Virus record (IMG/VR): IMGVR_UViG_3300024336_000005
Span: 140,009 to 204,008 of that record
DNA: 64,000 bases
Direction: 5' to 3' (one strand)
Notes under the pieces: generated by a model
Databases searched by the model: none
The model's input: only the letters and a program-made list of their open reading frames with translations
What the model was told of the DNA's origin: nothing
Made by a program: the position numbers and the translations under genes
Shown here: positions 12,218-29,351 of the stretch, in pieces
How the letters are laid out: every line of letters begins with the position of its first letter
Numbering within the stretch: the first letter of the stretch is position 1

Positions 12218-12817
12218 CCAGAGACGACTAGTGGAGGCAACGCTCTGAAGTTTGCTGCCTCTCAGAGGATTGACATTCGTCGCAAGACAAGTGCAGCAGA
12301 TACTGAGAAGGATGCAGATGGAAATGTATTCCGCATCCCGACGACGGTCAAGTTCGTAAAGAACAAGCTGTTTCCTCCCTTCCGAGTTGCTCACATTGAT
12401 ATGGAAATGAATGTTGGCATCAACAGAACAGCAGAAATCTTGGACCTTGCCGCTGACAACGACATAATTCTTAAGTCAGGGGCATGGTACGAATACGTTG
12501 ACCCCTCCCGAACGGAACTCTTGTTAAAGCTTCGTCAGCATGAGGATGTAAAGGCTTTGATCCAAGAGATTAAAGCCGCTCCAAAGGATTTTAATGTCGT
12601 TCCGGAAAGTATCAAGGAAGGAGCTCGAAAGATAGGTCCCCTTCTTGATGCCTTGGAGTTCGATGACAAGGGCTGGAGGGTTCAAGGGCGTTCTTCTGCT
12701 ATAGAGGCCCTAGGAGAGAGACCAGAGTTATTGGAGGAGCTTAGAGTTCACATTCGTGAAATCTATTTCCCAACCAGTAGCCCACAAGCGGAAGTTTCAG
12801 ACGATATTCCGTTTTAA
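12218..12817 (+). CDS. recA: RecA recombinase, exon 2
   Basis: PETTSGGNALKFAASQRIDIR, VKNKLFPPFR, KSGAWY. Spliced protein is 407 aa and ends SDDIPF. Confidence 0.93.
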   Translation, partial: PETTSGGNALKFAASQRIDIRRKTSAADTEKDADGNVFRIPTTVKFVKNKLFPPFRVAHIDMEMNVGINRTAEILDLAADNDIILKSGAWYEYVDPSRTELLLKLRQHEDVKALIQEIKAAPKDFNVVPESIKEGARKIGPLLDALEFDDKGWRVQGRSSAIEALGERPELLEELRVHIREIYFPTSSPQAEVSDDIPF

Positions 12818-12831
12818 TTTCAGGAGCTTAA

Positions 12832-13785
12832 ATGCCCGATTCATACACCGGTGTGTACGTCCTCTATGTTGATGAGACCCTAATCGATAGGGTCTTTTCT
12901 GAACGATCCCTTTCCGTTGAGGAACTCTTAGACGGAACGTTGAGTGAAGATGCTTGCAAGGAGTTGAATGTTCCAGTTCAAAATACTTCTTGGACTGAGT
13001 ATCCAAATACAAACTTTGTTCTAAAGTCTGTCTTCAGACCTAAGAAGTCCGCTCTTGTGAGACTGTCAAAGGATTGCAAGAGAGTTGAAGTCCTTTGGGA
13101 CTACAACAAGACTCCACTGCAAGGCTTGAAGCCACGCAACAAGGAGCAGAACATGCTCCTCAATGCTTTGATGGATGATGAGATTGCATGTGTCGTTGTA
13201 GAAGGCAAGGCAGGAAGTGGGAAGACGCTCTGTGCTCTTGCCGTTGCCTTGGATTGCATTGGATCGCCCAGCTCCCCTTATAAGAAGATTGTTCTTACGA
13301 GACCAATGTCCTCTGTGGGAGCTCCTTTGGGAGCTCTACCTGGAGATCAAGCGGAGAAGTTCCTTCCTTATCTTGGGAACTACTTCTCGAACTTTGAGTT
13401 CCTGTTAGGGAAGCATGGTCTTGCCTATCTTAAGACCATGATGGAGAAGGGGGACATTGAGATTCTGCCATTGCAACTAATTGGTGGCATCTCATGGCAT
13501 GATACACTCGTGATTGCCGATGAGGTGCAGTCCTTGAATGCACAACAGATGTATGCACTGGGCACACGCCCTGCTGCAAACTCTAAGTTGATTCTTCTTG
13601 GTGACAGCGCCCAGAGATATGGTAGGTTCGAGGATGCTAGACACACAGGGCTTTGGAAGATTGCCCACAGTGAGCATGCTCTTCGCTCGCCTTTGGTGAG
13701 CTACATTAAGCTTCTCAAGCAGGAGAGACACCCGCTTGCTGATGTCTTCTATAATACATTCGTTAATAATGAGGTTGTTGAATGA
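12832..13785 (+). CDS. phoH: PhoH-family ATPase
   Basis: PRNKEQ, GKAGSGKT, LTRP, LGALPGD..EK..PYL, IADEVQ, LLGDSAQ. Confidence 0.9.
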   Translation: MPDSYTGVYVLYVDETLIDRVFSERSLSVEELLDGTLSEDACKELNVPVQNTSWTEYPNTNFVLKSVFRPKKSALVRLSKDCKRVEVLWDYNKTPLQGLKPRNKEQNMLLNALMDDEIACVVVEGKAGSGKTLCALAVALDCIGSPSSPYKKIVLTRPMSSVGAPLGALPGDQAEKFLPYLGNYFSNFEFLLGKHGLAYLKTMMEKGDIEILPLQLIGGISWHDTLVIADEVQSLNAQQMYALGTRPAANSKLILLGDSAQRYGRFEDARHTGLWKIAHSEHALRSPLVSYIKLLKQERHPLADVFYNTFVNNEVVE

Positions 13786-14276
13786 GAGTAAGTATTTATA
13801 ACAAGGGCGTTTCCTACAACGGGGAGACAGTTAAGTCTCCCCTTCCCAAGGAGAGCACCACAGAGGCGGCGGCAGTAGATGTTTCTACTCCCGTCCCCTT
13901 TGTTCTTGAGGTTGGTGCTAAGCATCTGGTTGACACAGGCTTGATTATCAAGGCTCCTCGAGGGTATTGCATCCAGGTCCTACCTCGTAGCGGACTGGCT
14001 TGCAAGAAGGGGATTACCATCCCTAACGCTCCTGGTCTAATTGATAGAGACTACTGTGGCCCAGATGATGTGATCAAGATCATGCTTGTGAATCAGGGGA
14101 AGGAGGCTGTGGAGTTTAAGGCGGGAGATAGGGTGGCGCAGCTGCTCTTCACGCCGTACATCACGGTTTCGTGGGATGAGGAAGAGAAGGCCACCTTTGC
14201 TAAGGTAACCTCCAGAGGAGGTTTTGGTAGCACTGGCGTAGATAGGAAGAGTGGACTTTGGAACAGAAGAACCTAG
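13782..14276 (+). CDS. dut: Trimeric dUTPase
   Basis: AAVD, PRSGLA, GLIDRDY, GDRVAQL, RGGFGSTG. Confidence 0.95.
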   Translation: MRVSIYNKGVSYNGETVKSPLPKESTTEAAAVDVSTPVPFVLEVGAKHLVDTGLIIKAPRGYCIQVLPRSGLACKKGITIPNAPGLIDRDYCGPDDVIKIMLVNQGKEAVEFKAGDRVAQLLFTPYITVSWDEEEKATFAKVTSRGGFGSTGVDRKSGLWNRRT

Positions 14277-14449
14277 ACGTTGAAACATTAAACATCTGTG
14301 TTAATGTCCTTGAGTCCCTATGTCATGGTCCAGCACTAGCATCTAGGAGTTCCTATTATGCTGTGCTGGACATGCAGTATCCTAATATTAAAGCCGTCTC
14401 CTTTGGAGACGTCGTAGAAGAGAGAAAACTAAGAAAAGGTTGGTTCTAA
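14258..14449 (+). CDS. Hypothetical protein
   Basis: Small ORF filling the gap. Confidence 0.45.
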   Translation: MEQKNLDVETLNICVNVLESLCHGPALASRSSYYAVLDMQYPNIKAVSFGDVVEERKLRKGWF

Positions 14450-14643
14450 TGAATAAGAACGCACGCATTGCCTTCTGGGCAGATGAGACTGGCTTCTGGA
14501 TGAGTGTTAATGAGGGTAGCTTGGAGCGTCCTAACTGGATTGTTCAGGACATCCCTTCGGGTCATCTTAATCTGGAAATGTCAGAAGATAAGATTCAGGT
14601 GAAGATTACTCCTGTGGTAGCTGAAGTGAAAATTGATCTTTAG
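14449..14643 (+). CDS. Hypothetical protein
   Basis: TAATG-coupled small ORF. Confidence 0.55.
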   Translation: MNKNARIAFWADETGFWMSVNEGSLERPNWIVQDIPSGHLNLEMSEDKIQVKITPVVAEVKIDL

Positions 14644-14807
14644 CTGATCTCCCTCCAGCCTAGATCCTCTCCACCCACCTGTGGACCCGCCCGCAACCTC
14701 AAAGGCCAGCAGGGCCTTCAGTCCCAGTAAAGCTCTTCCAAATTGGGAAGATAATCATTACCACTCCTTTATTAGTTATGTTAAGCAATAACAGCAGGAG
14801 CTCCTCC

Positions 14808-15203
14808 ATGAGTAGATGTAACAAGTGTGATATGCCTATCAATGGCACAATGATGGATAGATGCTTCTGTGAGCCAGCTGTTGGTAAGTCTAGTATGGCC
14901 AAATATATGCCCACATGTGGGGCAGACTATGACGATGATCGTCGTGATATGGCTCCCATCTATACCATGCCTCCCGTGGTAAAGAACATAGACCCTCTTT
15001 GGGCTCACTTAGTGGTGAATGAGACCAACATAAGGTTTGAATACCTTTCTCCTAGTCGTGGGGCAACCACCAGGAGCGTTAAGCTTCTGGGATGTTATAA
15101 GAGCTTTGGTAATACATATATAATTGGCTACTGCATGCTAAGAGATGCAAAGAGGACCTTTAGGGTCGATAGAATTCAGAAGGTGGTGGCCGTTGACGCT
15201 TAA
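14808..15203 (+). CDS. WYL-domain protein with N-terminal Cys-rich module
   Basis: IRFEY.....TTRSV......YIIGYC.LRDAKRTFRVDRI is the WYL pattern. N-terminal CNKC...CFC. SD AGGAG at 14796. Confidence 0.8.
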   Translation: MSRCNKCDMPINGTMMDRCFCEPAVGKSSMAKYMPTCGADYDDDRRDMAPIYTMPPVVKNIDPLWAHLVVNETNIRFEYLSPSRGATTRSVKLLGCYKSFGNTYIIGYCMLRDAKRTFRVDRIQKVVAVDA

Positions 15204-15471
15204 GAAAAGATTTGAAGCCCTTGGTGCTGTTCATTTAGGGATGTTTACTAAAGCAGAGTCCGCTGAACTGTATGCCTATGATGAGAACTGGTGGGTTTTT
15301 TCTCCCTCTTATCACAGCTATTACTCCAAGCCCTTTGAGCTGGAGCCACTTGGTGCGAGGATGAATCTTACCTGGGATCCAGGTGATGCTAAGAATCCTG
15401 GCGTCAAAAGAATGGTGGAAATTGTAGAGGCTTGGCTTACGGCCAATCCTCGTCCCAGAGGTGAAGAATGA
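15145..15471 (+). CDS. Hypothetical protein (true start probably near 15193)
   Basis: ORF in operon. Confidence 0.5.
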   Translation: MQRGPLGSIEFRRWWPLTLKKRFEALGAVHLGMFTKAESAELYAYDENWWVFSPSYHSYYSKPFELEPLGARMNLTWDPGDAKNPGVKRMVEIVEAWLTANPRPRGEE

Positions 15472-16145
15472 GATGCAACAAATGTAGCATGCCCTTGAAG
15501 GGCTTTGGTATTGATCAGTGTTTCTGTGAGCCAGAGGCTATCAAGTCCAAAAAGTGGACAGTAGTTCATGAAGAAGTTAATGCTTCAGGCATTGATCTAA
15601 AGACTGAGGTTTTTGGATCTCTTCTAGAGCAGCGTAAAGGAGAGTACGTGACTAAAGCATTGATTGTCTTTGAGGGGCAAGACTTTGTAAAGACTGTGCG
15701 TAAGAATAGGCGTGAATATGATGCTCGGTTTATTATCCAAGAGATTCCCGGCCACGGCTGGAAGATTCGTAAGAATACGCTGACAGAACACCATGGAGAA
15801 ATGGAAAGTCTAGAGCCAATATTTGAAGTCTATCTAGAGGACGTGGAATTCTATCATGAAGAGGCAGGGGAACTATCTTTCTTTGGCCTCTGGGATTCTG
15901 GAACCGAGAGGTTCCATTCAGATATTAATGAGCATCTGCTTGATGCTCCGGTTAAGCCTAGCATTGTATCTCCTCAAGAGGTGAAGCGGATAGAGGCATG
16001 GGCTAAAGTGAAGAATCGCAAGAAGCCTTTTGCTCCTATCGTTATGAATAGTACGGCTGTTTCTTTTGACGATATGGTCTGCACTCAGCCCATGACGGGA
16101 AGTGTTTCTGGAAAGTGGCTCAAATGGAAGTATGTCGATGAGTAG
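15468..16145 (+). CDS. Hypothetical protein with the same N-terminal CNKC..CFCEP module as the WYL protein
   Basis: MRCNKCSMPLKGFGIDQCFCEP. Confidence 0.65.
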   Translation: MRCNKCSMPLKGFGIDQCFCEPEAIKSKKWTVVHEEVNASGIDLKTEVFGSLLEQRKGEYVTKALIVFEGQDFVKTVRKNRREYDARFIIQEIPGHGWKIRKNTLTEHHGEMESLEPIFEVYLEDVEFYHEEAGELSFFGLWDSGTERFHSDINEHLLDAPVKPSIVSPQEVKRIEAWAKVKNRKKPFAPIVMNSTAVSFDDMVCTQPMTGSVSGKWLKWKYVDE

Positions 16146-16584
16146 ACTTTCTTTAATCATTGGAGACTGGTCTAACGATGGCCATGGTAAGACTGATACC
16201 GTTCTTGTGACCATGAATGTCAGTAGGGCTGAACTCCTTAAGGCTCATGAAAAGGGGCTGAAGCAGGTGCCCGCTTTCAAGGGTTCTTGCGAAAACTATG
16301 AGGAGTCTTATATTTCCTTAGGATTGGCTCACCAGCTTGTTAAAGCTGGTTTGGATCCAGAGGACTTTCTTACTGACCCTTGTTGTCGTTGGGATGAATC
16401 AACTAAAAGTTTAATTGAATGTTCTTGGGACCATCCTGAGAATGAAGAGCTTCTCTTTATAGATTCAGAAGGTTATGCCAAGTTGTATATGGAGATATGC
16501 AAATTAGGAGACCCTCTTATTGCCTACTCATTCAATAATAATAAGTCCGACGAGATTTGCATCGGCGGCTATGGAGTAACTTGA
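16102..16584 (+). CDS. Hypothetical phage protein (start probably 16132 or 16138)
   Basis: GDWSNDGHG motif; ends IGGYG. Confidence 0.65.
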   Translation: MFLESGSNGSMSMSRLSLIIGDWSNDGHGKTDTVLVTMNVSRAELLKAHEKGLKQVPAFKGSCENYEESYISLGLAHQLVKAGLDPEDFLTDPCCRWDESTKSLIECSWDHPENEELLFIDSEGYAKLYMEICKLGDPLIAYSFNNNKSDEICIGGYGVT

Positions 16585-16585
16585 G

Positions 16586-16642
16586 GTGAAGCAATACAAA
16601 GAGTTAGTACAAGATGTACTAGAGAATGGAACCAAGAGATGA
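16586..16642 (+). pseudogene. Orphaned thyA N-terminal mini-ORF (18 aa)
   Basis: GTG start with SD GGAG. MKQYKELVQDVLENGTKR* matches the ThyA N-terminus. Its TGA overlaps the HNH ATG. Confidence 0.75.
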
Positions 16643-17130
16643 AGTGGATTCCTGGGTTCGAGGATCGTTATGCAGTTTCGGCTAATGGTGAGATCTGGTC
16701 ATATGTAGGACACATCCCTAGAAAATTAAAGCCAGATCTTGTTAAAGGATATCATCGAGTCACATTGTTTGATTCAAACAAGCGAACTCGTATGCCTGTC
16801 CATAGAATTGTCGCATTAACTTATATTTTGAATCCAGAAAACAGACCGCAAGTTAACCATATAGATGGCAACAAAATTAACAATGCTGCAATAAATTTAG
16901 AGTGGATGACATCTAAAGAAAACTGCGCTCATGCTTTGGAAGAGGGTCTTTATAAAACTGCTGTTGGCGAACAATATAATAGATCGGATCTAACTGACAT
17001 GGAAGTATTACAAATACGATCTGTGTGGGAAGAGAATGCTCACACTCAAAAAGAACTCGCTAACATGTTTTCTACAACTAGGTCAAATATAAATAATATT
17101 GTTAATAGATACACTTGGAAACATATATGA
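16639..17130 (+). CDS. Free-standing NUMOD4-HNH homing endonuclease
   Basis: WIPGFEDRYAVSANGEI (NUMOD4), VHRIVA...VNHIDGNKINN...NLEW.T..EN..HA, C-terminal HTH. AT-richer than flanks. Confidence 0.9.
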   Translation: MKWIPGFEDRYAVSANGEIWSYVGHIPRKLKPDLVKGYHRVTLFDSNKRTRMPVHRIVALTYILNPENRPQVNHIDGNKINNAAINLEWMTSKENCAHALEEGLYKTAVGEQYNRSDLTDMEVLQIRSVWEENAHTQKELANMFSTTRSNINNIVNRYTWKHI

Positions 17131-17948
17131 TTCAATATATAGAACTCCTTCAACAAGTTTTAAGCGAAGGAGAATACCATCAAGATCGTACTGGCACCGG
17201 CCGTTGCTCTATCTTTGGTGTCCAAAAGCGATATGATTTGAACAATGGAGCCACCTTTCCTCTGGTCACAATCCGCAAATCTTTCTTTGCTAGTGCGGTC
17301 AAAGAAATCCTTTGGATGCTTAGGGGTGAGCGCAATGTTAAAACTTTGGGAGCAGGGTTCTGGAACCCTTGGGCTCGAGAGGGTGGAGACATTGGGCCCT
17401 TGTATGGACATCAACTAAGACATTGGCCGGATGGGACTGAGGGTGGGAACGATCAAATTGCTAACGTTCTAGAGTCTCTGCGACAAAACCCCAAATCGCG
17501 CCGCCACATCATAACAACGTTCAATCCCCTTGACGCTCCTAAAGGCGTCCTCTATCCGTGTCATGGGATAGTCATACAATTCTATCCCAGTGCAGATGGG
17601 CAATTCCTGGATCTTCACATGGTGCAGCGATCACAAGATTTGATTCTTGGGTATCCTGTGAATGTTGCTGAGTATGCTCTGCTTCTTATGATTTTTGCTA
17701 ATCGACTAGGCAGAAAAGCCAGAACCCTAATTCACACTATTTCCGACTGTCATCTTTACTCAAATCACATCGAGGGTGTTAAAGAGATGCTCTCTAGAGA
17801 GCCGCTGAAGCTCCCTAGAGTGACGATAGCTGATAAGCCTATGCCTTACCCTGGTTGTGCCAGGGACGGCTCTGTATTGGAGCCTGAGGATGTACAACTG
17901 ATAGGATATGAACACCATGGAAGAATCAAGTTCCCCATTGCAGTCTGA
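17127..17948 (+). CDS. thyA: Thymidylate synthase
   Basis: DRTGTG, GPLYGHQLR, SRRH, PCH, QRSxD.LGYPVN (Asn, dUMP-type), DCHLYSNH. ATG overlaps the HNH stop. Confidence 0.95.
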   Translation: MIQYIELLQQVLSEGEYHQDRTGTGRCSIFGVQKRYDLNNGATFPLVTIRKSFFASAVKEILWMLRGERNVKTLGAGFWNPWAREGGDIGPLYGHQLRHWPDGTEGGNDQIANVLESLRQNPKSRRHIITTFNPLDAPKGVLYPCHGIVIQFYPSADGQFLDLHMVQRSQDLILGYPVNVAEYALLLMIFANRLGRKARTLIHTISDCHLYSNHIEGVKEMLSREPLKLPRVTIADKPMPYPGCARDGSVLEPEDVQLIGYEHHGRIKFPIAV

Positions 17949-18189
17949 TCCTGAGCTGGTCATAAACCTTGAAGAAGCCATTGATCAAATAAAGTCTGAC
18001 CTTGTCAAGATACAAAAACGGATTAAAGATGAAGAAGAATTCTTTGGAGAGATGGATGATGATTGCCCCTTGTTCATTCTAGATGGAAGAAAAAGGGAGG
18101 CCTGGGATTATGGTGTTGATTACGGCTATATTATGGGCGTAGCTGCCGGCCTAAAGGTTGCCTTAACACAACTTAGGAGAGCAATATGA
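17908..18189 (+). CDS. Hypothetical protein
   Basis: ORF in operon. Confidence 0.55.
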   Translation: MNTMEESSSPLQSDPELVINLEEAIDQIKSDLVKIQKRIKDEEEFFGEMDDDCPLFILDGRKREAWDYGVDYGYIMGVAAGLKVALTQLRRAI

Positions 18190-18569
18190 GCCTCTTGACA
18201 GTAACTAAGACAGTAGTCGATTGTTTCAACTGGGACACCTTTGTACGAGAAGCATATGGAAGACCATATTGTTTTCAGCAACAAGGTGGTTGCAAGATGC
18301 GAGGTACATATCACTTAGAGGTCCACGGAGAGAAGGGGTATGACCCCTATGGATGCAAAGGCCTTCCTTTAGAGCTGGATAACAACCTCTTTGGAGTGGC
18401 CCTTGAGGAATGGCTCAGGAGGGACCCCAAGGAGGCCCCACCATCTATAGACTTCCTTGAGACATGGTGGGAGAGAAACTTTTATCCCAGCATTGAAGCT
18501 GTTGCAGAAGACCTGTGCCAGAGAGGGCTTCTTCCTGTTGGTGAATATATAATTATCATCGACTGGTAG
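18186..18569 (+). CDS. Hypothetical phage protein
   Basis: ATGA-coupled, SD AGGAG. Confidence 0.7.
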   Translation: MSLLTVTKTVVDCFNWDTFVREAYGRPYCFQQQGGCKMRGTYHLEVHGEKGYDPYGCKGLPLELDNNLFGVALEEWLRRDPKEAPPSIDFLETWWERNFYPSIEAVAEDLCQRGLLPVGEYIIIIDW

Positions 18570-18581
18570 TCCAAACAATAA

Positions 18582-19778
18582 GTGGAGAAAGAAATGAGTT
18601 GGAAAGAAAAGTTTACTCCTACATCTGATACGCTGACGCTTCATTTTGATTCAGTCAAAGAGGCGGAAGTATTTAAGACGTGGCTTTGTAACTCGGGGGA
18701 GCAATTCTATGATGACTTTCGAGAAGTCATGCGTTCTGATGGGGAGCTCCCCAAAGATAGCTCTGAGTATGTAGAAATTAATTATCAAGACTTGCCTAAC
18801 CATATCTTCTTTAAAGCGGAAGGCTAAGGAGAGACTATGACAGTAGCACAATTGATCAGCCGTCTAAGAGACTTCCCTTTAGATGCAGATGTCTTAGTAG
18901 AAGCGAGGGATAGCGGAGAGCCCTACAATTTCAGCGTAGAAGAAGGGACTTGGTATGCGGAGATGACAGAACAACTTGGCGGTGAGCCAAATGAATACTA
19001 TGCTCGAACTGATGTTAAAAGATTCAAAGAGTATTCTACTAAGTTCTGTGTCAGCATTAGTCCGAGCTGGTAGCATGAACCAATTTCAAGAATCAGATGG
19101 ATGTAAGATCCACCTAATGCAAGGTGAACTCCCTCTTGTTAAGGTCCTGTTCCTTAAAAAAGAAGGAGAGGACCAGCGTTTGGTTGTTAACAAGAGTGTG
19201 ATGTTGGACGGTCAGCCTCTAACTGTAGAGACATGGCTGCGTAATAAGCATGGCGTTTGGAACGGCACCTTTAATCAGATCCAACTTAATACCCCTCTTT
19301 TGAAGGCTGGAGATGCCTACCCATTTACTTGTGTGTTCTGGACCTCTCCAGTGATGAGTAAGGATAGAGTTCCAATGGTAGGTCAGTAAGCTATGAGCAG
19401 GGAAACAACTTGGTACTTTGTATACACTTGCTGTCCCGACGGACCAAGTGTCCTAAAGGCTGTGTTCTGGTCTATATCAGAAGCTGATGTCTACCGAGAT
19501 GGCAATGGCTATCTGGAGATTCGTCGAGCTCTCTGGGAGGGCTATGGCAGTGTTCCAGACTACAGTGAAACGGAGAAGGTATGACAATCTACAGAGACTC
19601 CTCCTCGGGGAAGCTTGTAACCATTTGTTACCTTACCGCTTGGATGGGTAAGTGTAGTCCCAGACATAGAGCCTATCGGTACCCAGCTCCCCACTGGGGA
19701 GTTGATCTTGGCAGGGAGGTTCGAGAAGAAGAGATAGGCCAGAGATATATCCCCGTGTCAGAAAGAAGCTACCCATGA
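18582..19778 (+). CDS. Run of five small hypothetical genes (18582-18827, 18837-19073, about 19075-19389, 19393-19584, 19581-19778)
   Basis: Tightly packed co-oriented ORFs with SD-like motifs; no recognisable domains. Confidence 0.55.
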
Positions 19779-20170
19779 AGAACAATACAAACTGCACCAT
19801 AGGCATCCTAGAAGAGGATCAAAGCGTTAGCGTTATCTATTGCCACTGGGATGGCTATCTTGATGCGAACGGTGAGCGTCTCTGGAGGTTCTACTATGAA
19901 GAAAGTCATATTAGAGACCTGCTTGAGGGAGGAGATATCACATCTCTTGGCGCTAGCCATAAGGTAAGCGTTTACTATCATAAGGACTTCCAAGAGCCAC
20001 TTAAGGTTGCTCGTGTTTATGATACTTCTCTTGAGATGGTTGAGGCTGAGGGACGTAGGTTTAATTATCTCTATTGCATTCGCTCTGGCGAATGGTTCTT
20101 TTCAATGTGGTCGTCTAATGAATGGAAGAATTTAAAAGATGCAAACTTCAAGACCTCTGGTCCATTATGA
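19775..20170 (+). CDS. Hypothetical phage protein
   Basis: IYCHWDGY...G..L motif typical of a common phage family. Confidence 0.65.
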   Translation: MKNNTNCTIGILEEDQSVSVIYCHWDGYLDANGERLWRFYYEESHIRDLLEGGDITSLGASHKVSVYYHKDFQEPLKVARVYDTSLEMVEAEGRRFNYLYCIRSGEWFFSMWSSNEWKNLKDANFKTSGPL

Positions 20171-20915
20171 TGGTCCCATTGAATGGATCAATGAAGGCCG
20201 TGTGATTCTGTATGGAATCCACGGGTCTCATCTTTATGGGACAAATATTGAGACCTCTGATGAGGACTATAAGGGTATTGTTGTCCCTCCTAGAGTGTAC
20301 CGCCAGGGCTTTTCTAAGACCTTTGAGCAGGTTATCCAAGAGGGATGTGAGCTTGAGTATGTCATTTATGATATCCGTAAGTTCTTTAAGCTTGGGGTTA
20401 AGTGTAACCCCAACATCTTAGAGCTTCTCTACTCTAAGTCCTTCTTGCACTCCACTGAGGGAGGAAGACTGCTGGCTGAGAACAGGGATGCGTTTCTTTC
20501 TCAGCGTGCAATCTCTTCATACAATGGATATGCTCTGTCTCAGTTGAAAAAGATGGAGACCTATAGGGCTGCCAATCCAGAGAGAGCTAGGTTGCGGGAG
20601 TTGTATGGATATGACACCAAGTTTGCCATGCATTTGATTCGACTGTTAAGGGTCTGCAACGAGATGTTGACAGAGGGAACCATTAACGTGTTCCGTAAGG
20701 ATGCAGAGCAGCTGATAGAGATCAGGAGGGGTGGATGGTCCTTGGCTCGTGTTCATAAGGTGGTCCAAGACCTTGAGGCCAGGAACTCTGCATTGGCGAC
20801 TACAACGTCTCTGCCTAAGGAGCCAGACATCGACTTCTTAGAGTCTTTGATGTCTGATATAATTGAGATTACGGAGTGCTCGGTTGCCTCCAAGGATGAG
20901 ATAAATGTTTTTTGA
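20139..20915 (+). CDS. Pol-beta superfamily nucleotidyltransferase (YcgL/RlaP-like)
   Basis: GSHLYG.NIETSDEDYKGI, NPNILELL, YDTKFAMHLIRLL, L..IRRG. Confidence 0.85.
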   Translation: MQTSRPLVHYDGPIEWINEGRVILYGIHGSHLYGTNIETSDEDYKGIVVPPRVYRQGFSKTFEQVIQEGCELEYVIYDIRKFFKLGVKCNPNILELLYSKSFLHSTEGGRLLAENRDAFLSQRAISSYNGYALSQLKKMETYRAANPERARLRELYGYDTKFAMHLIRLLRVCNEMLTEGTINVFRKDAEQLIEIRRGGWSLARVHKVVQDLEARNSALATTTSLPKEPDIDFLESLMSDIIEITECSVASKDEINVF

Positions 20916-21435
20916 TGTAGTGGTCGCTTGCGACCAGGCTGGTGGTATTGCCAAGGATGGAAAAATCCCCTGGCATCTCCCCGAGGAGCTTCAGTGGTTT
21001 AAGAAGGTAACTTCTCACACTCAAGACCCTGACAAGCAGAATGCTGTAATCATGGGACGCAAGACTTGGGAGTCTTTGCCCGAGAGGGCAAGACCTCTAA
21101 AGGGCAGAGTGAATGTGGTGCTTTCGAGGGATGAAAACTATGCGCCCGAAGGTGATGCTTGGGGAGCTCTCTCTTTTGAAGATGCACTGCAAGCCATGGA
21201 TCATGGGGACTTTGGGTGTGTAGAGACTGTCTTTGTCATCGGTGGAGGGCAAGTATATAAAGAAGCATTTGACCACCCCAGCTGCCGCCTCATCATCATG
21301 TCTGGGATTCCAGAGACTTTCGACTGTGACACCTTCATTCGTGTCCCAGACCGCTTTGAAACAGTAGAGACTAGGCCCCACCAAGGATTTAAGATCTGGT
21401 GGCTTACCCCTAAGGAACTAACACAGGATGATTGA
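20905..21435 (+). CDS. folA: Dihydrofolate reductase
   Basis: GIAKDGKIPWHLPEEL, VIMGRKTWESLP..RPLKGRVNVVLSR, VIGGGQVY, CDTF. Confidence 0.95.
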   Translation: MFFDVVVACDQAGGIAKDGKIPWHLPEELQWFKKVTSHTQDPDKQNAVIMGRKTWESLPERARPLKGRVNVVLSRDENYAPEGDAWGALSFEDALQAMDHGDFGCVETVFVIGGGQVYKEAFDHPSCRLIIMSGIPETFDCDTFIRVPDRFETVETRPHQGFKIWWLTPKELTQDD

Positions 21436-24393: not shown

Positions 24394-24719
24394 CAGATTC
24401 ACTTGGGAATGAATACAGAGTGGGAGATATACTCTTGTACGTCGCCGGGGGAGATCAGGCTCGGCCACAGATTGCCATGTTTGTTGAAGCTTATATGAAT
24501 GCAGATGGAGATCCTAAAAATAGGTTCCTTTTTGCGAACCGTAGAACGTGGAATCGAGATCAAAATAACGTGTCTGTCAGAACTATTGGACGGCCCTGGA
24601 GGGCCCGCTTGAAGCGGCTCTCTGATGTCCTTCCTCATGACAAGGCCCTCGAGGCAAGAGATTTCTTTGAGTATGCCCTGGAGCTAAAGGGATACGAGCT
24701 TGGGCTGCCTCTTCTTTGA
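24390..24719 (+). CDS. Hypothetical protein
   Basis: GTGA overlap with groES; TDSLGNEYRVGDIL motif. Confidence 0.6.
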   Translation: MTDSLGNEYRVGDILLYVAGGDQARPQIAMFVEAYMNADGDPKNRFLFANRRTWNRDQNNVSVRTIGRPWRARLKRLSDVLPHDKALEARDFFEYALELKGYELGLPLL

Positions 24720-24766
24720 GGTATGATGTCAGAATGGAGAGGTCTCAGAGAGAAGGAGAGGTTCAA

Positions 24767-25592
24767 ATGAAGAGTGATGATCAGAACTCCTACCTTTTAT
24801 TTTGGGCCCAGAAGGGGCTTAAGGCAAGAGGGCTCTGGGATGACCAGGTCTATAAGGATAGGGTAGATTACGAGTGGAAAGTTATCTCTCGTATGGGGTT
24901 TGCAGGATACTATCTTGTAGTCGCTGACTACGTGGCTTGGGCCCGTAGTCAAAGAATCCCAGTGGGGCCTGGACGTGGTTCAGGTGCTGGCTCTTTGATT
25001 GCCTATGCTGTAGGCATAACGGATGTGGATCCCATTAAGTGGGGCCTAATGTTTGAGAGGTTCTTGAACCCAGGTAGAGTCTCCATGCCTGACTTTGACA
25101 TTGACTTTGGAAAGAGAGATCGACTCAAGGTTTTTGACTACCTGTCAGAGAAATACGGACATCAGAACGTTTGTCAGATTGGTACTATTGGCACCATGAA
25201 GGCAAAGCTTGCGGTCAAAGATGTGGGGAGAACCCTTGGACTTGATCCCTCTGAGCTGGAAAGATTCTCTAGCTTAATTCCCGACGAAGAAAGAGGAGGA
25301 CAGGGCGATCATGCTATCACCTTGAGCCTCCTCTTGGATCCTCCCAGGGAGCTTGTTAAGGCTCACGGAGAGGCTCTTGCAAAGTTCAGAACTGCTTATG
25401 AATTCGACAAAGACTTTCATAGAGTTGTCAACCTTGCTGTAGAGCTGGAAGGAATCCCAAAGAGTTACGGGGTGCACGCAGCTGGAGTTGTCATCGGAAT
25501 TGATTCTCTATGGGGAGATATTCCTCTTAGGAAATCAAATGATGGAAGGCCTGTTAGTCAGTGGACTGACAAGCAGGTCGAAAAGATGGGGT
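24767..25592 (+). CDS. dnaE: DNA polymerase III alpha catalytic core, exon 1
   Basis: SD AGGAGAGG; GFAGYYLVV.D, GPGRGSGAGSL, FERFLNP.RVSMPDFDIDF, HAAGVVI. Confidence 0.93.
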
Positions 25593-25734
25593 TAGCTTAT
25601 TAGCCCCTGTATGGAGCAATCCGTACAGCAAACAAGGTGAACCCCAAAGCAAAGGGGGTGTGCTGCATCTGCAGCGCTAACAGGGGAACCTAAGTGAGCG
25701 AGTCTCATAAGGCAATCCTGTGCTAAGCTTTTGA

Positions 25735-25763
25735 TTGATTAGGTATTGCAAAATTGATATAAT
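25735..25763 (+). promoter_or_regulatory. Sigma70-type promoter for the intron HNH gene
   Basis: TTGATT-17 bp-TATAAT with extended -10 TG. Confidence 0.6.
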
Positions 25764-25790
25764 AGGAGCTCAACAAACAGGAGCTGCGTT

Positions 25791-26327
25791 ATGCAAAAGT
25801 TAGAAGGATTTGAGAAGGTAGAATCTGAAGGAATTTTGGGAGAGTATTATATTCATCCAGACGGAAGGATCTACAGAGATTACGGACATAGAATAAAATT
25901 TCTTTCCGAGAGGCCAAATGCTTATGGCTATAGTCGAATAAGCTTGCTTCATCAGGATGGACGTAGAGTGGATCGAATGATGCATCGATTATTGATGTTA
26001 ACATTTGTCCCAAATCCAGATAATAAGCCACAAGTCAATCATAAAGACGGAGATAAAAGCAACAATCAGCTTTCCAATTTGGAATGGGTTACAGATCGAG
26101 AAAATAAGCTTCATTCACATAGAGTGCTTGGAGCCAAATCTAGTGACAAAAGTTGTTTCTTATTTTATTTTGGGGGCTTTGTTCAAAGGTTTCCAAACAT
26201 CCAAGCTGCTTGTAACTATGCAGCTAAAAAATATGGGTGCTCCTCAAAGTCTTTATGTAAATATTACACATCTAATGGATGTGCAATTATTACAGAAGAA
26301 AGTGCAACGACTATCCTAACGGAGTAG
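25791..26327 (+). CDS. Intron-encoded HNH homing endonuclease (I-HmuI-like)
   Basis: HRLLM.TFVPNPDNKPQVNHKDGDKSNNQLSNLEWVT..EN..H; located in the P6 region of the intron. Confidence 0.9.
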   Translation: MQKLEGFEKVESEGILGEYYIHPDGRIYRDYGHRIKFLSERPNAYGYSRISLLHQDGRRVDRMMHRLLMLTFVPNPDNKPQVNHKDGDKSNNQLSNLEWVTDRENKLHSHRVLGAKSSDKSCFLFYFGGFVQRFPNIQAACNYAAKKYGCSSKSLCKYYTSNGCAIITEESATTILTE

Positions 26328-26420
26328 GGGGGGTATTGCTCCTCTCGAAGCGCCTTGATCTCTGAATCAATACAGAGAATATGATATAGTCTGTGCCACT
26401 AGAAATAGTGGAATAACACG

Positions 26421-28141
26421 TTGTAAAGTTCGACTTTCTGGGACTCCGCACACTTGATGTAATTGAAGACGCCTGTCGTAGCATAGAGAAAAGAACTGGA
26501 GTGACTATTGATTGGGAACAGACTCCCGAGGATGATGGTCCTACATTCGATATGCTCAGCAGAGGAGACACCTTTGGTGTCTTCCAGCTGGAGGCATCTG
26601 GTATCTCTGGGTTTACCAAGGGATATAAGCCAAGGTCTATCGATGACATCTCAATCATCTCAGCTCTATACAGACCTGGTCCGCTGGATAATGGGATGGT
26701 AGATGCCATTCTGTCTGTCCGCAAGGGGAAGAAGATTGAAGAGAGTCCTGTTGATGTCATTAAAGAAATCCTTAAGGATACGAATGGGGTTCTGACATAT
26801 CAGGAACAAGTATTAGCAATATCAAGGGAGATGGCTGGGTTTACCCTGTCGGGTGCTGATCTATTGAGGCGCGCGATTGGCAAGAAGCTGCCCGAAGAGA
26901 TGCAAGCGCAGGAGCAAAACTTTGTTGATGGCTCCGTAGAGAAGGGGTATCCAAAGCATCAAGCTTTGGAAGTATTTGAAATCATTAAGAAATTCGCTGA
27001 CTATTGTTTGTCATATGATACTAAGGTATTGACCGATAAGGGGCCTCTCTCAATTGGTCATATTGTAGAAAATCAGCTAGAGGTTTCTGTTTATTCTATT
27101 GATGAGCATGGGCTTGTCTACTCTCAGCCGGTGGCTCAGTGGCATGACAGGGGCATAAGAGAAGTCTTTGAATACAAGCTTGAGGATGGCTCTGTCATCC
27201 GAGCGACCGAAGATCATAAGTTTATGACCGTCGATGGAGATATGCTTGCTATTGAAACAATCTTCCTGCAGAATAGGGATATGCTTGTCATTGAAACAGG
27301 CAAGATTCAAATAGGGGAGATTGAAATGAAGCCTTATAATAAACTAAATGACCTGGACAAACAACTTGTCCAACGACTGTACTATGAAGGATTATCCTTT
27401 GAGGACATCTCAAAGGAAGCTGTGGTATCTCAACGTTCTGTTAGTCGTGTTTTGCAAGAGGCTAATATTAACACCAGAAGGAAAAACCGTTATACCCTTA
27501 ATGAAAGCTTCTTCTGTGGAGCATATGATCATTATGAATGTGCATATTTTTTAGGCCTACTGGCAGCAGATGGATGCGTTACTCATAAGGATTACATCGC
27601 CCTCCAGCTTATTGATGAAGAACTTGTCTTATGGTTTCGCAAAGCGATCGAATACTCAGGAGAAGTTCGGCTTATCCTTGGCGAGGAGCGAAAGCCCCCT
27701 GGCCAAGATGCCTATAGGGTGAACTTTAGCTCTGCCATAATGTCAGAGGAACTTCGTTCATATGGAATCATTGCCGGAAGACATCTTCAAGCAATTCCGA
27801 AGTTAGAAGATTCAATTGTGCCTCATTTTATTCGAGGGTATTTTGATGGAGATGGATGTGTTTACTTAAGGCCAGAGGGTTCTGGTGGAGTTGTTCATAT
27901 TGTAGCCTCCGAGGCGTTTTGCGAATCGCTTAAAGAATACTTTGGATTCGGAACAATTAGTTCACATCCCAGTGGTATGTATTATTGGAGGATCTTTGCA
28001 AAAAAACATGTGAATGTTTTTTATGAAGCCCTATATGATTCTGATGGTTCAGAGACCCTGTGCCTTAATCGCAAAAAGCAACTAATGGAAGCCTTCCTAC
28101 GGAGCTACAAGTATGAAAATTGTTGGAAAGCAAAGGATTGA
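26421..28141 (+). CDS. dnaE: DnaE exon 2 + N-intein + in-frame LAGLIDADG endonuclease
   Basis: KFDFLG, GVFQLE, ALYRPGP, YQEQV, ADLLRRAIGKK, FADY then CLSYDT (intein start 27005). The frame ends at stop 28141. Confidence 0.92.
27005..27300 (+). mobile_element. Split intein N-half, Npu/Ssp DnaE-type
   Basis: CLSYDTKVLT...QPVAQWHDRG..EVFEY.LEDGS.IRATEDHKFMTVDG.ML.I..IF (blocks A and B). Confidence 0.92.
27326..28141 (+). CDS. LAGLIDADG homing endonuclease with N-terminal HTH (own SD/ATG, in frame with IntN)
   Basis: SD AGGGGAG at 27313-19; YFLGLLAADGCV and FIRGYFDGDGCV; LNRKK. Confidence 0.85.
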   Translation: MKPYNKLNDLDKQLVQRLYYEGLSFEDISKEAVVSQRSVSRVLQEANINTRRKNRYTLNESFFCGAYDHYECAYFLGLLAADGCVTHKDYIALQLIDEELVLWFRKAIEYSGEVRLILGEERKPPGQDAYRVNFSSAIMSEELRSYGIIAGRHLQAIPKLEDSIVPHFIRGYFDGDGCVYLRPEGSGGVVHIVASEAFCESLKEYFGFGTISSHPSGMYYWRIFAKKHVNVFYEALYDSDGSETLCLNRKKQLMEAFLRSYKYENCWKAKD

Positions 28142-29351
28142 GGATCAATCAGTCTATGATATTGGAGTAGAAAAAGACCATAACTTTCTTCTTGCTGATG
28201 GACAGGTTGCTTCCAATTGCTTTAACAAAAGCCATAGTGTGGCCTATTCAATGCTTTCATATAGAACAGCTTATCTTAAGTGTCACTATCCTTCTGACTT
28301 CTATGCTGCAGAGCTTACGAGCCACGAAGGGGAAGTCAAGAAGCTTCTCCCAGCAATGGCAGATGCTCGAGCACACCACATGAAGATCAAGACTCCTGAT
28401 ATTAATCTTAGTGAGGAGTGCTTTACGGCGACCGCCAGACATGAAATAAGGTTTGGACTTGCTGGAATTAAGGGGCTTGGGACAAAGGCTCTTCAGTCTA
28501 TTATGAATGAAAGAGCCAATGGGAGTTTTGAGTCTATCACTGGCTTATGCAAGAGGCTCTCCTCTTCTGAGATTAAGTCGAATAATCTCACAGCCTTAGC
28601 AAGGTCTGGTGCATTTTCCCAAATAGAAACTGGAATGAACACAGCAGAGCTTGCAGAGTATGCCGTTAACACAGCGATTGCTCTTCGTAGCTATCATAAA
28701 GATGAGAAGAAAGGCCAGGTGTCTATCTTTTCTGTTATGACTGAAGCTCCAGAAAATGAGATTAATGTTCAGAGACCGTCAATTCATTTGGATGATGGAG
28801 ATGAACTGGAGCTAGAGAAGGAAGCCTTGGGCTTTTATATCTCAGGATCTCCTCTGGATAAGTACAATACTATTAAGGAAAGATCCCATATAGATGAAAT
28901 TGAAAGCTTAGAAGTTGATGGCATTTGGGTATCAGTTCTTGCCAGGATAACAGAGCTTAAGATTAGAAATGGAAAGAGGGGAAGCTTTGCAATACTACAG
29001 CTAGAAGATACTAGCGGCAGCATTGGAGCTAAGATTTGGTCTAACAATATGGCTGAAGCTCGTCCATACTTAGAAGAAGGTAAGAGTGTTGTTGTCAGAG
29101 GAAAGACAAACTCCTACAAAGGACTTGAAATTGTTGTGGATTCTATTGTAGACGCTGAATCAGAAGTGAAAAGACTTTTGAAGAGAGTGGTCATTCATAG
29201 ACTTGATTCCACGATTTTAAATACACTCTTGCAATTGCCTGCAGGAAATGTTCCTATAGATCTTGAGCTTTCAAATGGCCAGATCAAACAACGACTTGGA
29301 TTTTTTGAAATCCAACCCCACATGCTGAGGGAACTGAATGAGATGGACTGA
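28113..29351 (+). CDS. dnaE: Split intein C-half (35 aa, 28113-28217) + DnaE C-terminal extein (HhH, OB)
   Basis: SD GGAG at 28101; MKIVGKQ...VYDIGVEKDHNFLLADGQVASN|CFNKSHSVAY; PDINLS, IRFGLAGIKGLG, EKEALGFYISGSPL, LEDTSG. Confidence 0.93.
   Translation: MKIVGKQRIEDQSVYDIGVEKDHNFLLADGQVASNCFNKSHSVAYSMLSYRTAYLKCHYPSDFYAAELTSHEGEVKKLLPAMADARAHHMKIKTPDINLSEECFTATARHEIRFGLAGIKGLGTKALQSIMNERANGSFESITGLCKRLSSSEIKSNNLTALARSGAFSQIETGMNTAELAEYAVNTAIALRSYHKDEKKGQVSIFSVMTEAPENEINVQRPSIHLDDGDELELEKEALGFYISGSPLDKYNTIKERSHIDEIESLEVDGIWVSVLARITELKIRNGKRGSFAILQLEDTSGSIGAKIWSNNMAEARPYLEEGKSVVVRGKTNSYKGLEIVVDSIVDAESEVKRLLKRVVIHRLDSTILNTLLQLPAGNVPIDLELSNGQIKQRLGFFEIQPHMLRELNEMD

What the first reader, a model, noticed from the sequence alone, without database searches (positions are those of the whole stretch)
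16586..17200. HNH gene inserted in thyA that supplies a replacement thyA 5' end, with no splicing needed
Seen: an 18-codon ORF MKQYKELVQDVLENGTKR* precedes the HNH gene, and a second ThyA start MIQYIELLQQVLSEGEYHQDRTGTG follows it. The three ORFs are chained by ATGA overlaps (16639-42 and 17127-30). No intron core or intein is visible. Inference: the endonuclease cassette entered thyA near codon 17, uses the old start as a translational leader, and carries a recoded, probably cleavage-resistant N-terminus that restores the gene. This is a splicing-free way to parasitise an essential gene.
Basis: partly seen in the sequence, partly recalled or inferred. Interest (0 to 1): 0.7.

Follow-up and report, generated by a model that had tools for sequence, protein, structure and literature searches.

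The report
Homing endonuclease swapped in foreign thyA
A selfish HNH endonuclease gene in a marine phage arrived together with most of a foreign thymidylate synthase gene, overwrote the resident copy, and left its first 18 codons as a scar; this is a clear natural example of a process already known from phages and fungal mitochondria.

Summary
An 18-codon ORF (16586-16642, GTG start) that looks like a ThyA N-terminus, an HNH gene (16639-17130) and a complete thyA (17127-17948) are chained by two ATGA overlaps. There is no intron or intein.

The stub is the resident gene's old 5' end. It matches 16 of 18 residues of an HNH-less ThyA (P0003) from a syntenic contig in the same sample, but only 9 of 18 of its own ThyA.

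The cassette did not bring just a "recoded N-terminus". ThyA residues 19-213 are 52% identical to P0003, residues 214-273 are 93% identical, and the last 37 are 100%. So the HNH plus about 213 codons of a foreign allele replaced the resident gene, with a 3' crossover near 17766.

The HNH is I-HmuI-like. Its nearest homolog also abuts a thyA. Two related contigs carry thyA stubs of 22 and 40 codons next to a different HNH family.

The best mechanism is one-sided homing: homologous repair on the 3' side and an illegitimate join on the 5' side. Remnants of displaced genes next to endonuclease genes are already described in phage "HEG-islands" and in fungal mitochondrial hybrid genes. This is a new member of a known kind, of moderate interest.

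The parts
16573..16576 (+). GGAG Shine-Dalgarno-like motif 9 nt upstream of the stub's GTG; presumably the ancestral thyA ribosome-binding site
   Evidence: Read directly from the sequence. Its function is inferred.
16586..16642 (+). thyA 5' stub: 18 codons plus TGA, the remnant of the displaced resident (long-type, P0003-like) thyA allele
   Evidence: 16 of 18 residues match the P0003 N-terminus, against 9 of 18 for the window's own ThyA. Over 54 nt the DNA is 39-41 of 54 identical to uninterrupted thyA 5' ends (L043, L044, L047), 43 of 54 to the L196 stub, and 27 of 54 to the window's own thyA. Homology to relatives ends right after codon 18 (AGA).
16639..17130 (+). Free-standing HNH homing endonuclease gene, I-HmuI-like (N-terminal NUMOD4-like region, HNH motif, C-terminal helix-turn-helix-like region), 163 aa, 36% GC against 47% for the window
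   Evidence: Pfam HNH_3, NUMOD4 and weak MarR. phrog_59 'HNH endonuclease', E 4e-48. PDB 1u3e (I-HmuI), E 6e-16 over residues 2-115. GC values. Absent from the thyA neighbourhood of relatives L043, L044-46, L128 and the P0003 contig.
17089..17130 (+). Last 42 nt of the HNH gene, overlapping the thyA start region. Nearly identical to the same junction in L127 and includes an in-frame TTG (17115) that would give a METY- extension to ThyA
   Evidence: 39 of 42 nt match L127, against 192 of 339 (57%) for the rest of the HNH gene. In L127 the ATG at the equivalent position is the thyA start.
17127..17765 (+). Imported part of thyA (codons 1 to about 213): a foreign, divergent allele that travelled with the HNH gene
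   Evidence: Residues 19-213 are only 52% identical to P0003 and 56% to the best overall homolog P0002. It lacks the long-type insert and has the short-type active-site region (PCHG..IQF, HMVQRS).
17766..17948 (+). Resident-type 3' end of thyA (codons 214-273 plus stop); the 3' crossover lies at or just upstream of about 17766
   Evidence: 56 of 60 residues match P0003. The last 37 are 37 of 37, against 65-76% for other homologs. Fisher exact test against the middle segment gives p about 1e-9. The GVKEMLSREP motif is characteristic of long-type alleles.

Best explanation
The phage's ancestor carried an uninterrupted long-type thyA like P0003, directly downstream of the 16102-16584 gene. It probably met a co-infecting phage that carried an I-HmuI-like free-standing HNH gene immediately upstream of its own, divergent thyA.

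Inferred steps:
1. The endonuclease nicked or cut the resident thyA at or 3' of codon 18, near the conserved GDRTGTG-coding stretch.
2. The recipient DNA 3' of the break was resected until enough homology with the donor was found, about 600 bp downstream in the conserved GVKEMLSREP-coding region. Repair synthesis then copied the donor thyA 5' part and the HNH gene.
This left codons 1-18 of the old gene as a stub.

The result is stub, HNH, and a chimeric but complete thyA. ThyA function is kept without splicing, and the HNH gene is now linked to an allele that it presumably does not cut.

What is shown: the stub and the 3' segment are P0003-like, the middle is foreign, the HNH is present in some relatives and absent in others, the HNH-thyA linkage recurs, and no intron or intein is present.

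What is inferred: the endonuclease is active and targets this site; repair was one-sided; and the stub, which keeps the old ribosome-binding site and start and ends in ATGA, now delivers ribosomes to the HNH gene.
For: - Stub and P0003: 16 of 18 residues identical. ThyA residues 214-273 are 93% identical and the last 37 are 100%, but residues 19-213 only 52%.
- The P0003 contig has the order WYL gene, 92-aa gene, about 250-aa gene, thyA. It comes from the same JGI sample as a 157-kb copy of this phage.
- Related phages with the same dUTPase...thyA...RlaP/DHFR neighbourhood have an uninterrupted thyA and no HNH.
- The nearest HNH homolog (P0122, 52% identity) also sits directly upstream of and overlapping a thyA, with a junction 39 of 42 nt identical and no stub. 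This looks like the donor-type arrangement.
- Independent parallels exist. L196, whose upstream protein is 71% identical to the window's, has a 22-codon thyA stub followed by a phrog_374-type HNH. L130 has a 40-codon stub, the same HNH family, and then a complete thyA.
- The HNH gene is 36% GC against 47% for the window.
- No intron is found, and the search has an internal positive control.
- One-sided homing with illegitimate junctions and long resection has been shown experimentally in T4 (PMC2988022, citing Parker et al. 1999).
- Fragments of essential cargo genes next to endonuclease genes are reported in phages (PMC10055350).
- The mirror-image arrangement, a duplicated native C-terminus, is reported in fungal mitochondria (PMC3630166).
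Against: - The DNA of the P0003 contig could not be retrieved (and not found). The crossover is therefore mapped only at protein level, and microhomology at the left junction cannot be examined.
- No donor was found. The nearest relative of the imported thyA segment is only 56-59% identical.
- The imported segment looks mosaic: residues 19-100 are closer to long-type alleles and residues 101-213 to P0002. More than one event may be involved.
- No HNH-less variant of this same phage was seen in four runs.
- Endonuclease activity, target site and immunity of the new allele are untested.
- The very tidy left junction, where the stub's last codon supplies the A of the HNH ATG, is not something random end-joining predicts. 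It implies either selection or a different mechanism.
Confidence: 0.72

Rival explanations
1. Cassette with built-in arms. The unit stub-HNH-thyA already existed in the donor and homes by ordinary two-sided homologous recombination, using the 54-nt stub as its left arm and thyA as its right arm. On this view the stub is a functional part of the mobile element, not a scar made in this lineage.
For: Barth et al. suggest that cargo fragments in HEG-islands may serve as recombination substrates (PMC10055350). About 50 bp of homology is within the range that supports T4 homing (my recollection of Parker et al. 1999; the paper was not held). The tidy ATGA junction fits an evolved unit.
Against: The stub matches the syntenic relative P0003, as expected for resident DNA. 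The two contigs with the other HNH family have stubs of different length and sequence, 22 and 40 codons, so the junctions formed independently. The nearest HNH homolog has no stub.
Confidence: 0.12
2. The HNH gene inserted at codon 17-18 and carried only a short replacement N-terminus, and the rest of thyA is the original gene.
For: The stub and a duplicate N-terminus flank the HNH gene.
Against: Residues 19-213 are no closer to the P0003-type allele (52%) than to distant homologs, and they lack the long-type insert. Only residues 214-273 are P0003-like.
Confidence: 0.04
3. Two unrelated events. thyA became chimeric by ordinary recombination between phages, and the HNH gene later inserted upstream on its own and created the stub.
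For: The imported thyA segment looks mosaic. The HNH lineage abuts two very different thyA types, in the window and in L127, so the endonuclease gene and its cargo are not strictly co-inherited.
Against: An insertion alone cannot create a second complete N-terminus. The duplication requires thyA 5' DNA to have arrived together with the HNH gene. The HNH 3' end and thyA start junction is conserved with L127.
Confidence: 0.08
4. A group I intron or intein. The stub is exon 1, or the N-extein, and is joined to codon 19 or 20 of thyA at the RNA or protein level.
For: The same genome has an HNH-containing group I intron and an intein in dnaE. T4 thyA (td) carries an intron (PMC2988022).
Against: No Intron_gpI match at E up to 10 in 15800-18600, while the dnaE intron scores E 1e-4 in the same mode. 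There are zero non-coding bases on either side of the HNH ORF, so no room for a ribozyme core. The stub, HNH and thyA lie in three different frames and no Hint domain is present. thyA has its own complete N-terminus. No joints appear in contigs, including those of an RNA run (weak evidence). Folding of both junctions is no better than shuffled sequence.
Confidence: 0.02
5. Local tandem duplication of the phage's own thyA 5' end, followed by divergence, with the HNH gene landing between the two copies.
For: Two ThyA N-termini lie 540 bp apart.
Against: The copies share only 27 of 54 nt, while the stub is 72-80% identical to the thyA 5' ends and thyA stub of relatives. The 3' P0003-like segment shows an allele switch.
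Confidence: 0.02

Closest known systems
Free-standing homing endonucleases of T4-type phages and intronless homing (SegF, SegG, MobE and others); 'HEG-islands' with essential cargo (Edgell et al. 2010, PMC2988022; Barth et al. 2023, PMC10055350)
   Same: The endonuclease gene sits between genes, next to a conserved nucleotide-metabolism gene. It is present in some relatives and absent in others. Flanking donor sequence is co-converted. Different endonuclease families occupy the same location in related phages. Small ORFs that are fragments of the cargo gene lie beside the endonuclease gene.
   Different: Here both ends of the displaced allele are identifiable in one gene: an 18-codon 5' stub and a 60-codon 3' tail. 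The stub is fused by ATGA to the endonuclease start. No activity data exist for this enzyme.
[quoted passage not shown]
   Same: Homology on one side only, long resection, and an ectopic junction on the other side. The host gene is the same, thymidylate synthase.
   Different: That was an engineered assay with an intron-borne GIY-YIG enzyme (I-TevI). This is a natural product with a free-standing HNH enzyme. Junction microhomology cannot be checked here because no donor sequence is available.
Mobile-ORF hybrid genes of fungal mitochondria (Allomyces macrogynus atp6, Paquin et al. 1994; Glomus atp6, atp9, cox2, nad3, PMC3630166)
   Same: An endonuclease ORF arrives with a foreign piece of the host gene. 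The native piece survives as an unused duplicate that matches the close relative better than the in-use copy does.
   Different: This is the mirror image. There the C-terminus is replaced and the native remnant lies downstream, often with the endonuclease fused in frame. Here the N-terminal about 80% is replaced and the native remnant lies upstream as a separate mini-ORF. The setting is a phage, not an organelle.
I-HmuI of Bacillus phage SPO1 (PDB 1u3e)
   Same: Sequence homology over the NUMOD4-like region and HNH region, E 6e-16. Similar size, 163 against 174 aa.
   Different: I-HmuI is encoded inside a group I intron of a DNA polymerase gene. This enzyme is free-standing beside thyA. Its nicking or cutting behaviour is unknown.
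T4 td group I intron with I-TevI, and the Aeromonas phage Aeh1 nrdA gene split by mobE (the Aeh1 case is from my own knowledge, not checked here)
   Same: A selfish endonuclease gene associated with an essential nucleotide-metabolism gene.
   Different: td needs RNA splicing. Aeh1 nrdA is expressed as two polypeptides. Here the gene is intact and needs neither.

Membership tests
HNH homing endonuclease, I-HmuI-like (Pfam HNH_3 plus NUMOD4) | HNH (beta-beta-alpha-metal) motif | tested here: met
   HNH_3 scores 25.8 bits against a cut-off of 24.8, residues 68-95. The motif NHIDGNKINN...NLEWMT..EN aligns with I-HmuI. phrog_59, E 4e-48.
HNH homing endonuclease, I-HmuI-like (Pfam HNH_3 plus NUMOD4) | N-terminal NUMOD4-type DNA-binding region | tested here: inconclusive
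   Pfam NUMOD4 scores 22.9 bits, just under the 23.4 cut-off. However, residues 2-67 align with the I-HmuI N-terminus.
HNH homing endonuclease, I-HmuI-like (Pfam HNH_3 plus NUMOD4) | Site-specific nicking or cleavage of the endonuclease-less allele | not testable with these tools
   Needs an enzyme assay.
Free-standing homing endonuclease gene with linked cargo (intronless homing, HEG-island) | Not embedded in an intron or intein; has its own ORF between genes | tested here: met
   with the positive control.
Free-standing homing endonuclease gene with linked cargo (intronless homing, HEG-island) | Present in some related genomes and absent in others at the same locus | tested here: met
   Absent upstream of thyA in L043, L044-46, L128 and the P0003 contig. 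A different HNH family occupies the site in L196 and L130.
Free-standing homing endonuclease gene with linked cargo (intronless homing, HEG-island) | A tract of donor sequence co-converted next to the endonuclease gene, bounded by resident sequence | tested here: met
   Segment identities to P0003: 16 of 18, then 52%, then 93-100%.
Hybrid gene with duplicated native terminus (fungal mitochondrial mORF type) | The native remnant resembles the close relative's allele more than the in-use copy does | tested here: met
   16 of 18 against 9 of 18 residues; 72-80% against 50% nt.
One-sided (illegitimate) homing product | Microhomology between donor and recipient at the non-homologous junction | not testable with these tools
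   No donor sequence was found.
Group I intron with an endonuclease ORF (as in T4 td) | Ribozyme core, and exon continuity that requires splicing | tested here: not met
   No Intron_gpI match at E up to 10, while the dnaE intron is detected. thyA is complete on its own. There is no non-coding DNA beside the HNH ORF.
Intein with an endonuclease domain | In-frame Hint domain within the host protein | tested here: not met
   The three ORFs lie in three frames and there is no Hint or intein Pfam match. The dnaE intein in the same window is detected.

The most novel reading that the evidence does not exclude
The stub is not just a scar but a working part of a self-contained selfish cassette, in two ways. 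First, it keeps the strong ancestral thyA ribosome-binding site and start, and passes terminating ribosomes to the HNH gene, which has no good Shine-Dalgarno sequence, through the ATGA overlap. Endonuclease expression would then be tied to the host gene's own translation signals. Second, its 54 nt of thyA 5' sequence act as a left homology arm, so the stub-HNH-immune-thyA unit can home by two-sided recombination into any naive long-type thyA. Repeated rounds would explain why thyA in this marine phage group is a hotspot, with stubs ending at codons 18, 21 and 40 and two endonuclease families involved.
Probability: 0.2. Interest if true: 0.55.

Novelty: new member of a known kind. Interest (0 to 1): 0.4.

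Why it matters
The locus is an unusually readable natural record of how a free-standing homing endonuclease invades an essential phage gene without splicing. Both edges of the displaced allele are still visible, and an HNH-less allele co-occurs in the same sample. Two sister cases with another endonuclease family show that the thyA 5' region is a recurrent target.

It supports the view that endonuclease genes drive allele replacement and mosaicism of core nucleotide-metabolism genes in uncultured marine phages. It also gives a concrete prediction of the enzyme's target, at or just 3' of thyA codon 18, beside the GDRTGTG-coding stretch.

On the practical side, short ORFs next to endonuclease genes should be recognised as gene scars and not annotated as new genes. 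Chimeric thyA sequences like this one will also mislead marker-gene phylogenies.

Tried and rejected
- Phage GenBank records (blastn): only short hits to the conserved HNH motif, and no relative of the locus.
- IMG/VR scans with ThyA, the upstream protein and the HNH: only the same phage on a 204-kb contig. None of about 140 distant HNH relatives lies next to a thyA.
- Metagenome scan with P0003: the P0003 contig was not recovered, and the look-up of encoding contigs could not deliver its DNA. The DNA-level crossover could therefore not be mapped.
- Laying contigs of four runs, including one RNA run: the partial word shares were just fragmentary low-coverage assemblies identical to the window. 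There was no HNH-less variant and no joint. The depth spike at 16835-16874 comes from other organisms' HNH motif.
- Promoter and terminator scan, and folding of both junctions: nothing above shuffled controls.
- Rfam at gathering threshold on the whole window: no matches. It also missed the dnaE intron, so only the permissive mode was used as evidence.
- Parker et al. 1999 could not be read. It is cited only through the review PMC2988022.
- Rejected after testing: intron, intein, local tandem duplication, and chance similarity of the stub.
Full report
**What is there.** The window belongs to an uncultured marine phage. It is an IMG/VR record of 143 kb, and the same phage also occurs on contigs of about 204 kb.

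On the + strand, an upstream gene of unknown function ends at 16584. A GTG at 16586, preceded by GGAG at 16573-16576, opens 18 codons (MKQYKELVQDVLENGTKR) that end in TGA at 16640-16642. The ATG of a 163-aa ORF overlaps that stop (ATGA, 16639-16642) and runs to TGA at 17128-17130. The ATG of a 273-aa ORF overlaps that stop in turn (ATGA, 17127-17130) and runs to 17948.

- The middle ORF is an HNH endonuclease. Pfam gives HNH_3 above its cut-off and NUMOD4 just below it. It matches phrog_59 and is homologous to the solved I-HmuI structure 1u3e at E 6e-16.
- The last ORF is a full-length thymidylate synthase. Pfam E is 8.5e-84 over profile positions 2-266 of 266, it aligns end to end with solved ThyA chains, and every column that is invariant among nine homologs is kept.

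**Is it real and non-random?** The same order of genes was seen in all 24 contigs read from independent JGI, ENA and Logan assemblies. Nine seawater runs hold every sampled word of 15400-18600. Small contigs bridge the upstream gene, stub and HNH start junction.

The stub is identical to residues 3-18 of a ThyA from another contig, P0003. ATGA overlaps by themselves are common in this gene cluster, so they are not evidence of anything special.

**No intron, no intein.** Rfam's permissive mode found no group I intron match at E up to 10 in 15800-18600. The same mode does detect a group I intron (E 1e-4, 26063-26412) in the HNH-containing interruption of dnaE in this same window, so the negative result is meaningful.

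There is not one non-coding base between stub and HNH, or between HNH and thyA. The three ORFs lie in three different frames. No Hint domain is present, and thyA carries its own N-terminus. The junction regions fold no better than shuffled sequence. Contigs from four runs, one of them an RNA library, show no joints. That last point is weak evidence, because contigs drop rare forms.

**What the stub is.** P0003 is 309 aa and lies on a 3,240-bp contig from JGI sample 3300072015, which also holds a 157-kb copy of this phage. Its contig has the order WYL-domain gene, 92-aa gene, about 250-aa gene, thyA, with no HNH. The order is similar to the window's, although the window's 148-160-aa gene is missing there.

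- The stub matches the P0003 N-terminus at 16 of 18 residues, and the window's own ThyA N-terminus at 9 of 18.
- In DNA, the stub's 54 nt are 39-41 of 54 identical to the 5' ends of uninterrupted thyA genes in related phages (L043, L044, L047), 43 of 54 to the stub in L196, and 27 of 54 to the window's functional thyA.
- Homology with those relatives ends exactly after codon 18 (AGA). They continue with GGY GAC CGN ACT, encoding G-D-R-T, whereas the window continues with the HNH gene.

**The thyA gene is a chimera.** Against P0003, ThyA residues 19-213 are 52% identical. That is no better than for distant homologs, and this part lacks the long-type insert and has a short-type active-site region. 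Residues 214-273 are 93% identical, and the last 37 are 37 of 37, while other homologs reach 65-76% there. Fisher's exact test gives p about 1e-9. The GVKEMLSREP motif at the switch point is typical of long-type alleles.

So the resident allele survives at both ends: codons 1-18 as the stub and codons 214-273 as the 3' tail. About 1.1 kb in between (16640 to about 17765) is imported, made up of the HNH gene plus about 213 codons of a foreign thyA. The HNH gene is 36% GC against 47% for the window.

The imported thyA has no close relative in the searched databases; the best is P0002 at 58%. It may itself be mosaic.

**The HNH-thyA linkage and parallels.** The nearest HNH homolog, P0122 (52% identity, in L127), also lies immediately upstream of and overlapping a thyA, here a very different 365-aa allele. 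It has no stub. The last 42 nt of the two HNH genes are 39 of 42 identical, against 57% for the rest. This block contains the thyA start used in L127, which corresponds to an in-frame TTG at 17115 in the window. None of about 140 more distant HNH relatives in IMG/VR has a thyA within 2.5-3 kb.

Two further contigs show the same scar with a different endonuclease family (phrog_374/3377):

- In L196 the upstream protein is 71% identical to the window's. Its thyA is cut after codon 21 (MKQYKELIQHVLENGTRRGDR, then A and a stop), and the HNH gene starts 55 nt later.
- In L130 a 40-codon thyA fragment is followed by that HNH family and then a complete, different thyA.

Related phages L043, L044-46 and L128 have an uninterrupted thyA. 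The 5' region of thyA is therefore a recurrent target in this phage group, and the stubs were formed independently.

**Mechanism.** The best explanation is homing of a free-standing endonuclease together with its linked thyA allele into a naive long-type thyA. The right side was repaired by homologous recombination after long resection. The left side was closed by an illegitimate join, because nothing upstream of the HNH gene matched the recipient.

This is the 'one-sided' homing shown experimentally for the T4 td intron, with ectopic junctions and extensive degradation (review PMC2988022; the primary paper was not held). On this model the cleavage site lies at or 3' of codon 18, beside the highly conserved GDRTGTG-coding stretch. 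The window's functional allele differs at nearly every base of codons 16-19, which fits immunity to the enzyme but does not prove it.

The stub keeps the old ribosome-binding site and start. The HNH gene has no convincing Shine-Dalgarno sequence of its own, so termination-reinitiation at the ATGA overlap is plausible in this phage. The 55-nt and 23-nt gaps in L196 and L130 show that such coupling is not a general property of these scars.

**Comparison with what is known.** Free-standing endonucleases next to their target genes, co-conversion of flanking markers, and 'HEG-islands' are all described for phages. In HEG-islands, endonuclease genes carry essential cargo, are exchanged for other endonuclease families at the same site, and are accompanied by small ORFs that are fragments of the cargo gene (PMC2988022; PMC10055350).

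The mirror image is known from fungal mitochondria. There, an endonuclease ORF arrives with a foreign C-terminus, and the native C-terminus is left as an unused duplicate that matches the sister species (Allomyces atp6; Glomus atp6, atp9, cox2, nad3; PMC3630166).

The present locus is a clean new example of that kind, on the 5' side of a phage thyA. It is not a new principle.

**Verdict.** Translational coupling and cleavage resistance are untested. Novelty: a new member of a known kind. Interest is moderate (0.4).

Noticed in passing
window 24716-26425: The DNA polymerase III alpha (dnaE-like) gene is interrupted after ...EKMGL (about 25594) by about 825 nt that hold the genome's only other HNH_3 gene (25791-26327, 39% identical to the thyA HNH). 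The reading frame resumes with VKFDFLGLRTL at about 26420. Rfam's permissive mode finds Intron_gpI at 26063-26412 (27.6 bits, E 1e-4) and 25680-25774 (E 0.041), below the gathering score. This is probably an HNH-bearing group I intron.
   Followed up: partly
window 27005-28220: The same dnaE gene carries an intein very like the cyanobacterial DnaE split intein. The N-part starts CLSYDTKVLT at 27005 and runs on into a LAGLIDADG endonuclease domain, and that ORF stops at 28141. An overlapping ORF from 28113 supplies the C-part (...NFLLADGQVASN) and resumes the polymerase at CFNKSH (28218). This is a 'fractured gene' arrangement, with an endonuclease between the split-intein halves.
   Followed up: partly
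L040 2882-4471 (and L041): A viral contig has a 529-aa thyA with an in-frame insert of about 250 aa in the variable loop, between ThyA residues about 100 and 123. The insert contains an HNH-like region of the L130/L196 type (...YPLYGGNGVTVSEQW...). No intron was found by Rfam. This is another way an endonuclease sits in thyA.
   Followed up: partly
window 17115-17129 and L127 3966-3980: An in-frame TTG at 17115 would give ThyA an N-terminal METY extension. The nearest HNH-thyA locus uses an ATG at the equivalent position (METYINN...). The true thyA start in the window (TTG 17115 or ATG 17127) is therefore uncertain, and the conserved 42-nt block may be constrained by coding in two frames.
   Followed up: partly
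window 16835-16874: All four laid runs, including the RNA run, show contigs of very high depth (up to about 500) matching only these 40 nt with 5-6 mismatches. These come from other organisms' copies of the conserved HNH motif (NHIDGNK...), not from this phage.
   Followed up: no
window 12800-21000 and L015: thyA lies in a tightly packed + strand cluster with many ATGA overlaps. The cluster includes a dUTPase, a WYL-domain protein (14778-15203), an RlaP-like nucleotidyltransferase and DHFR. The order dUTPase...thyA...RlaP/DHFR is shared with several large uncultured phage contigs (L043, L044, L128).
   Followed up: partly
window 16102-16584; L130 69-470; L196 155-619: The unknown-function gene just upstream of the thyA stub (phrog_20092, with motifs IGDWSNDGHGKTD and IGGYG) is conserved next to the thyA stub in L196 and one short ORF upstream of it in L130. 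It is missing from the P0003 contig.
   Followed up: no
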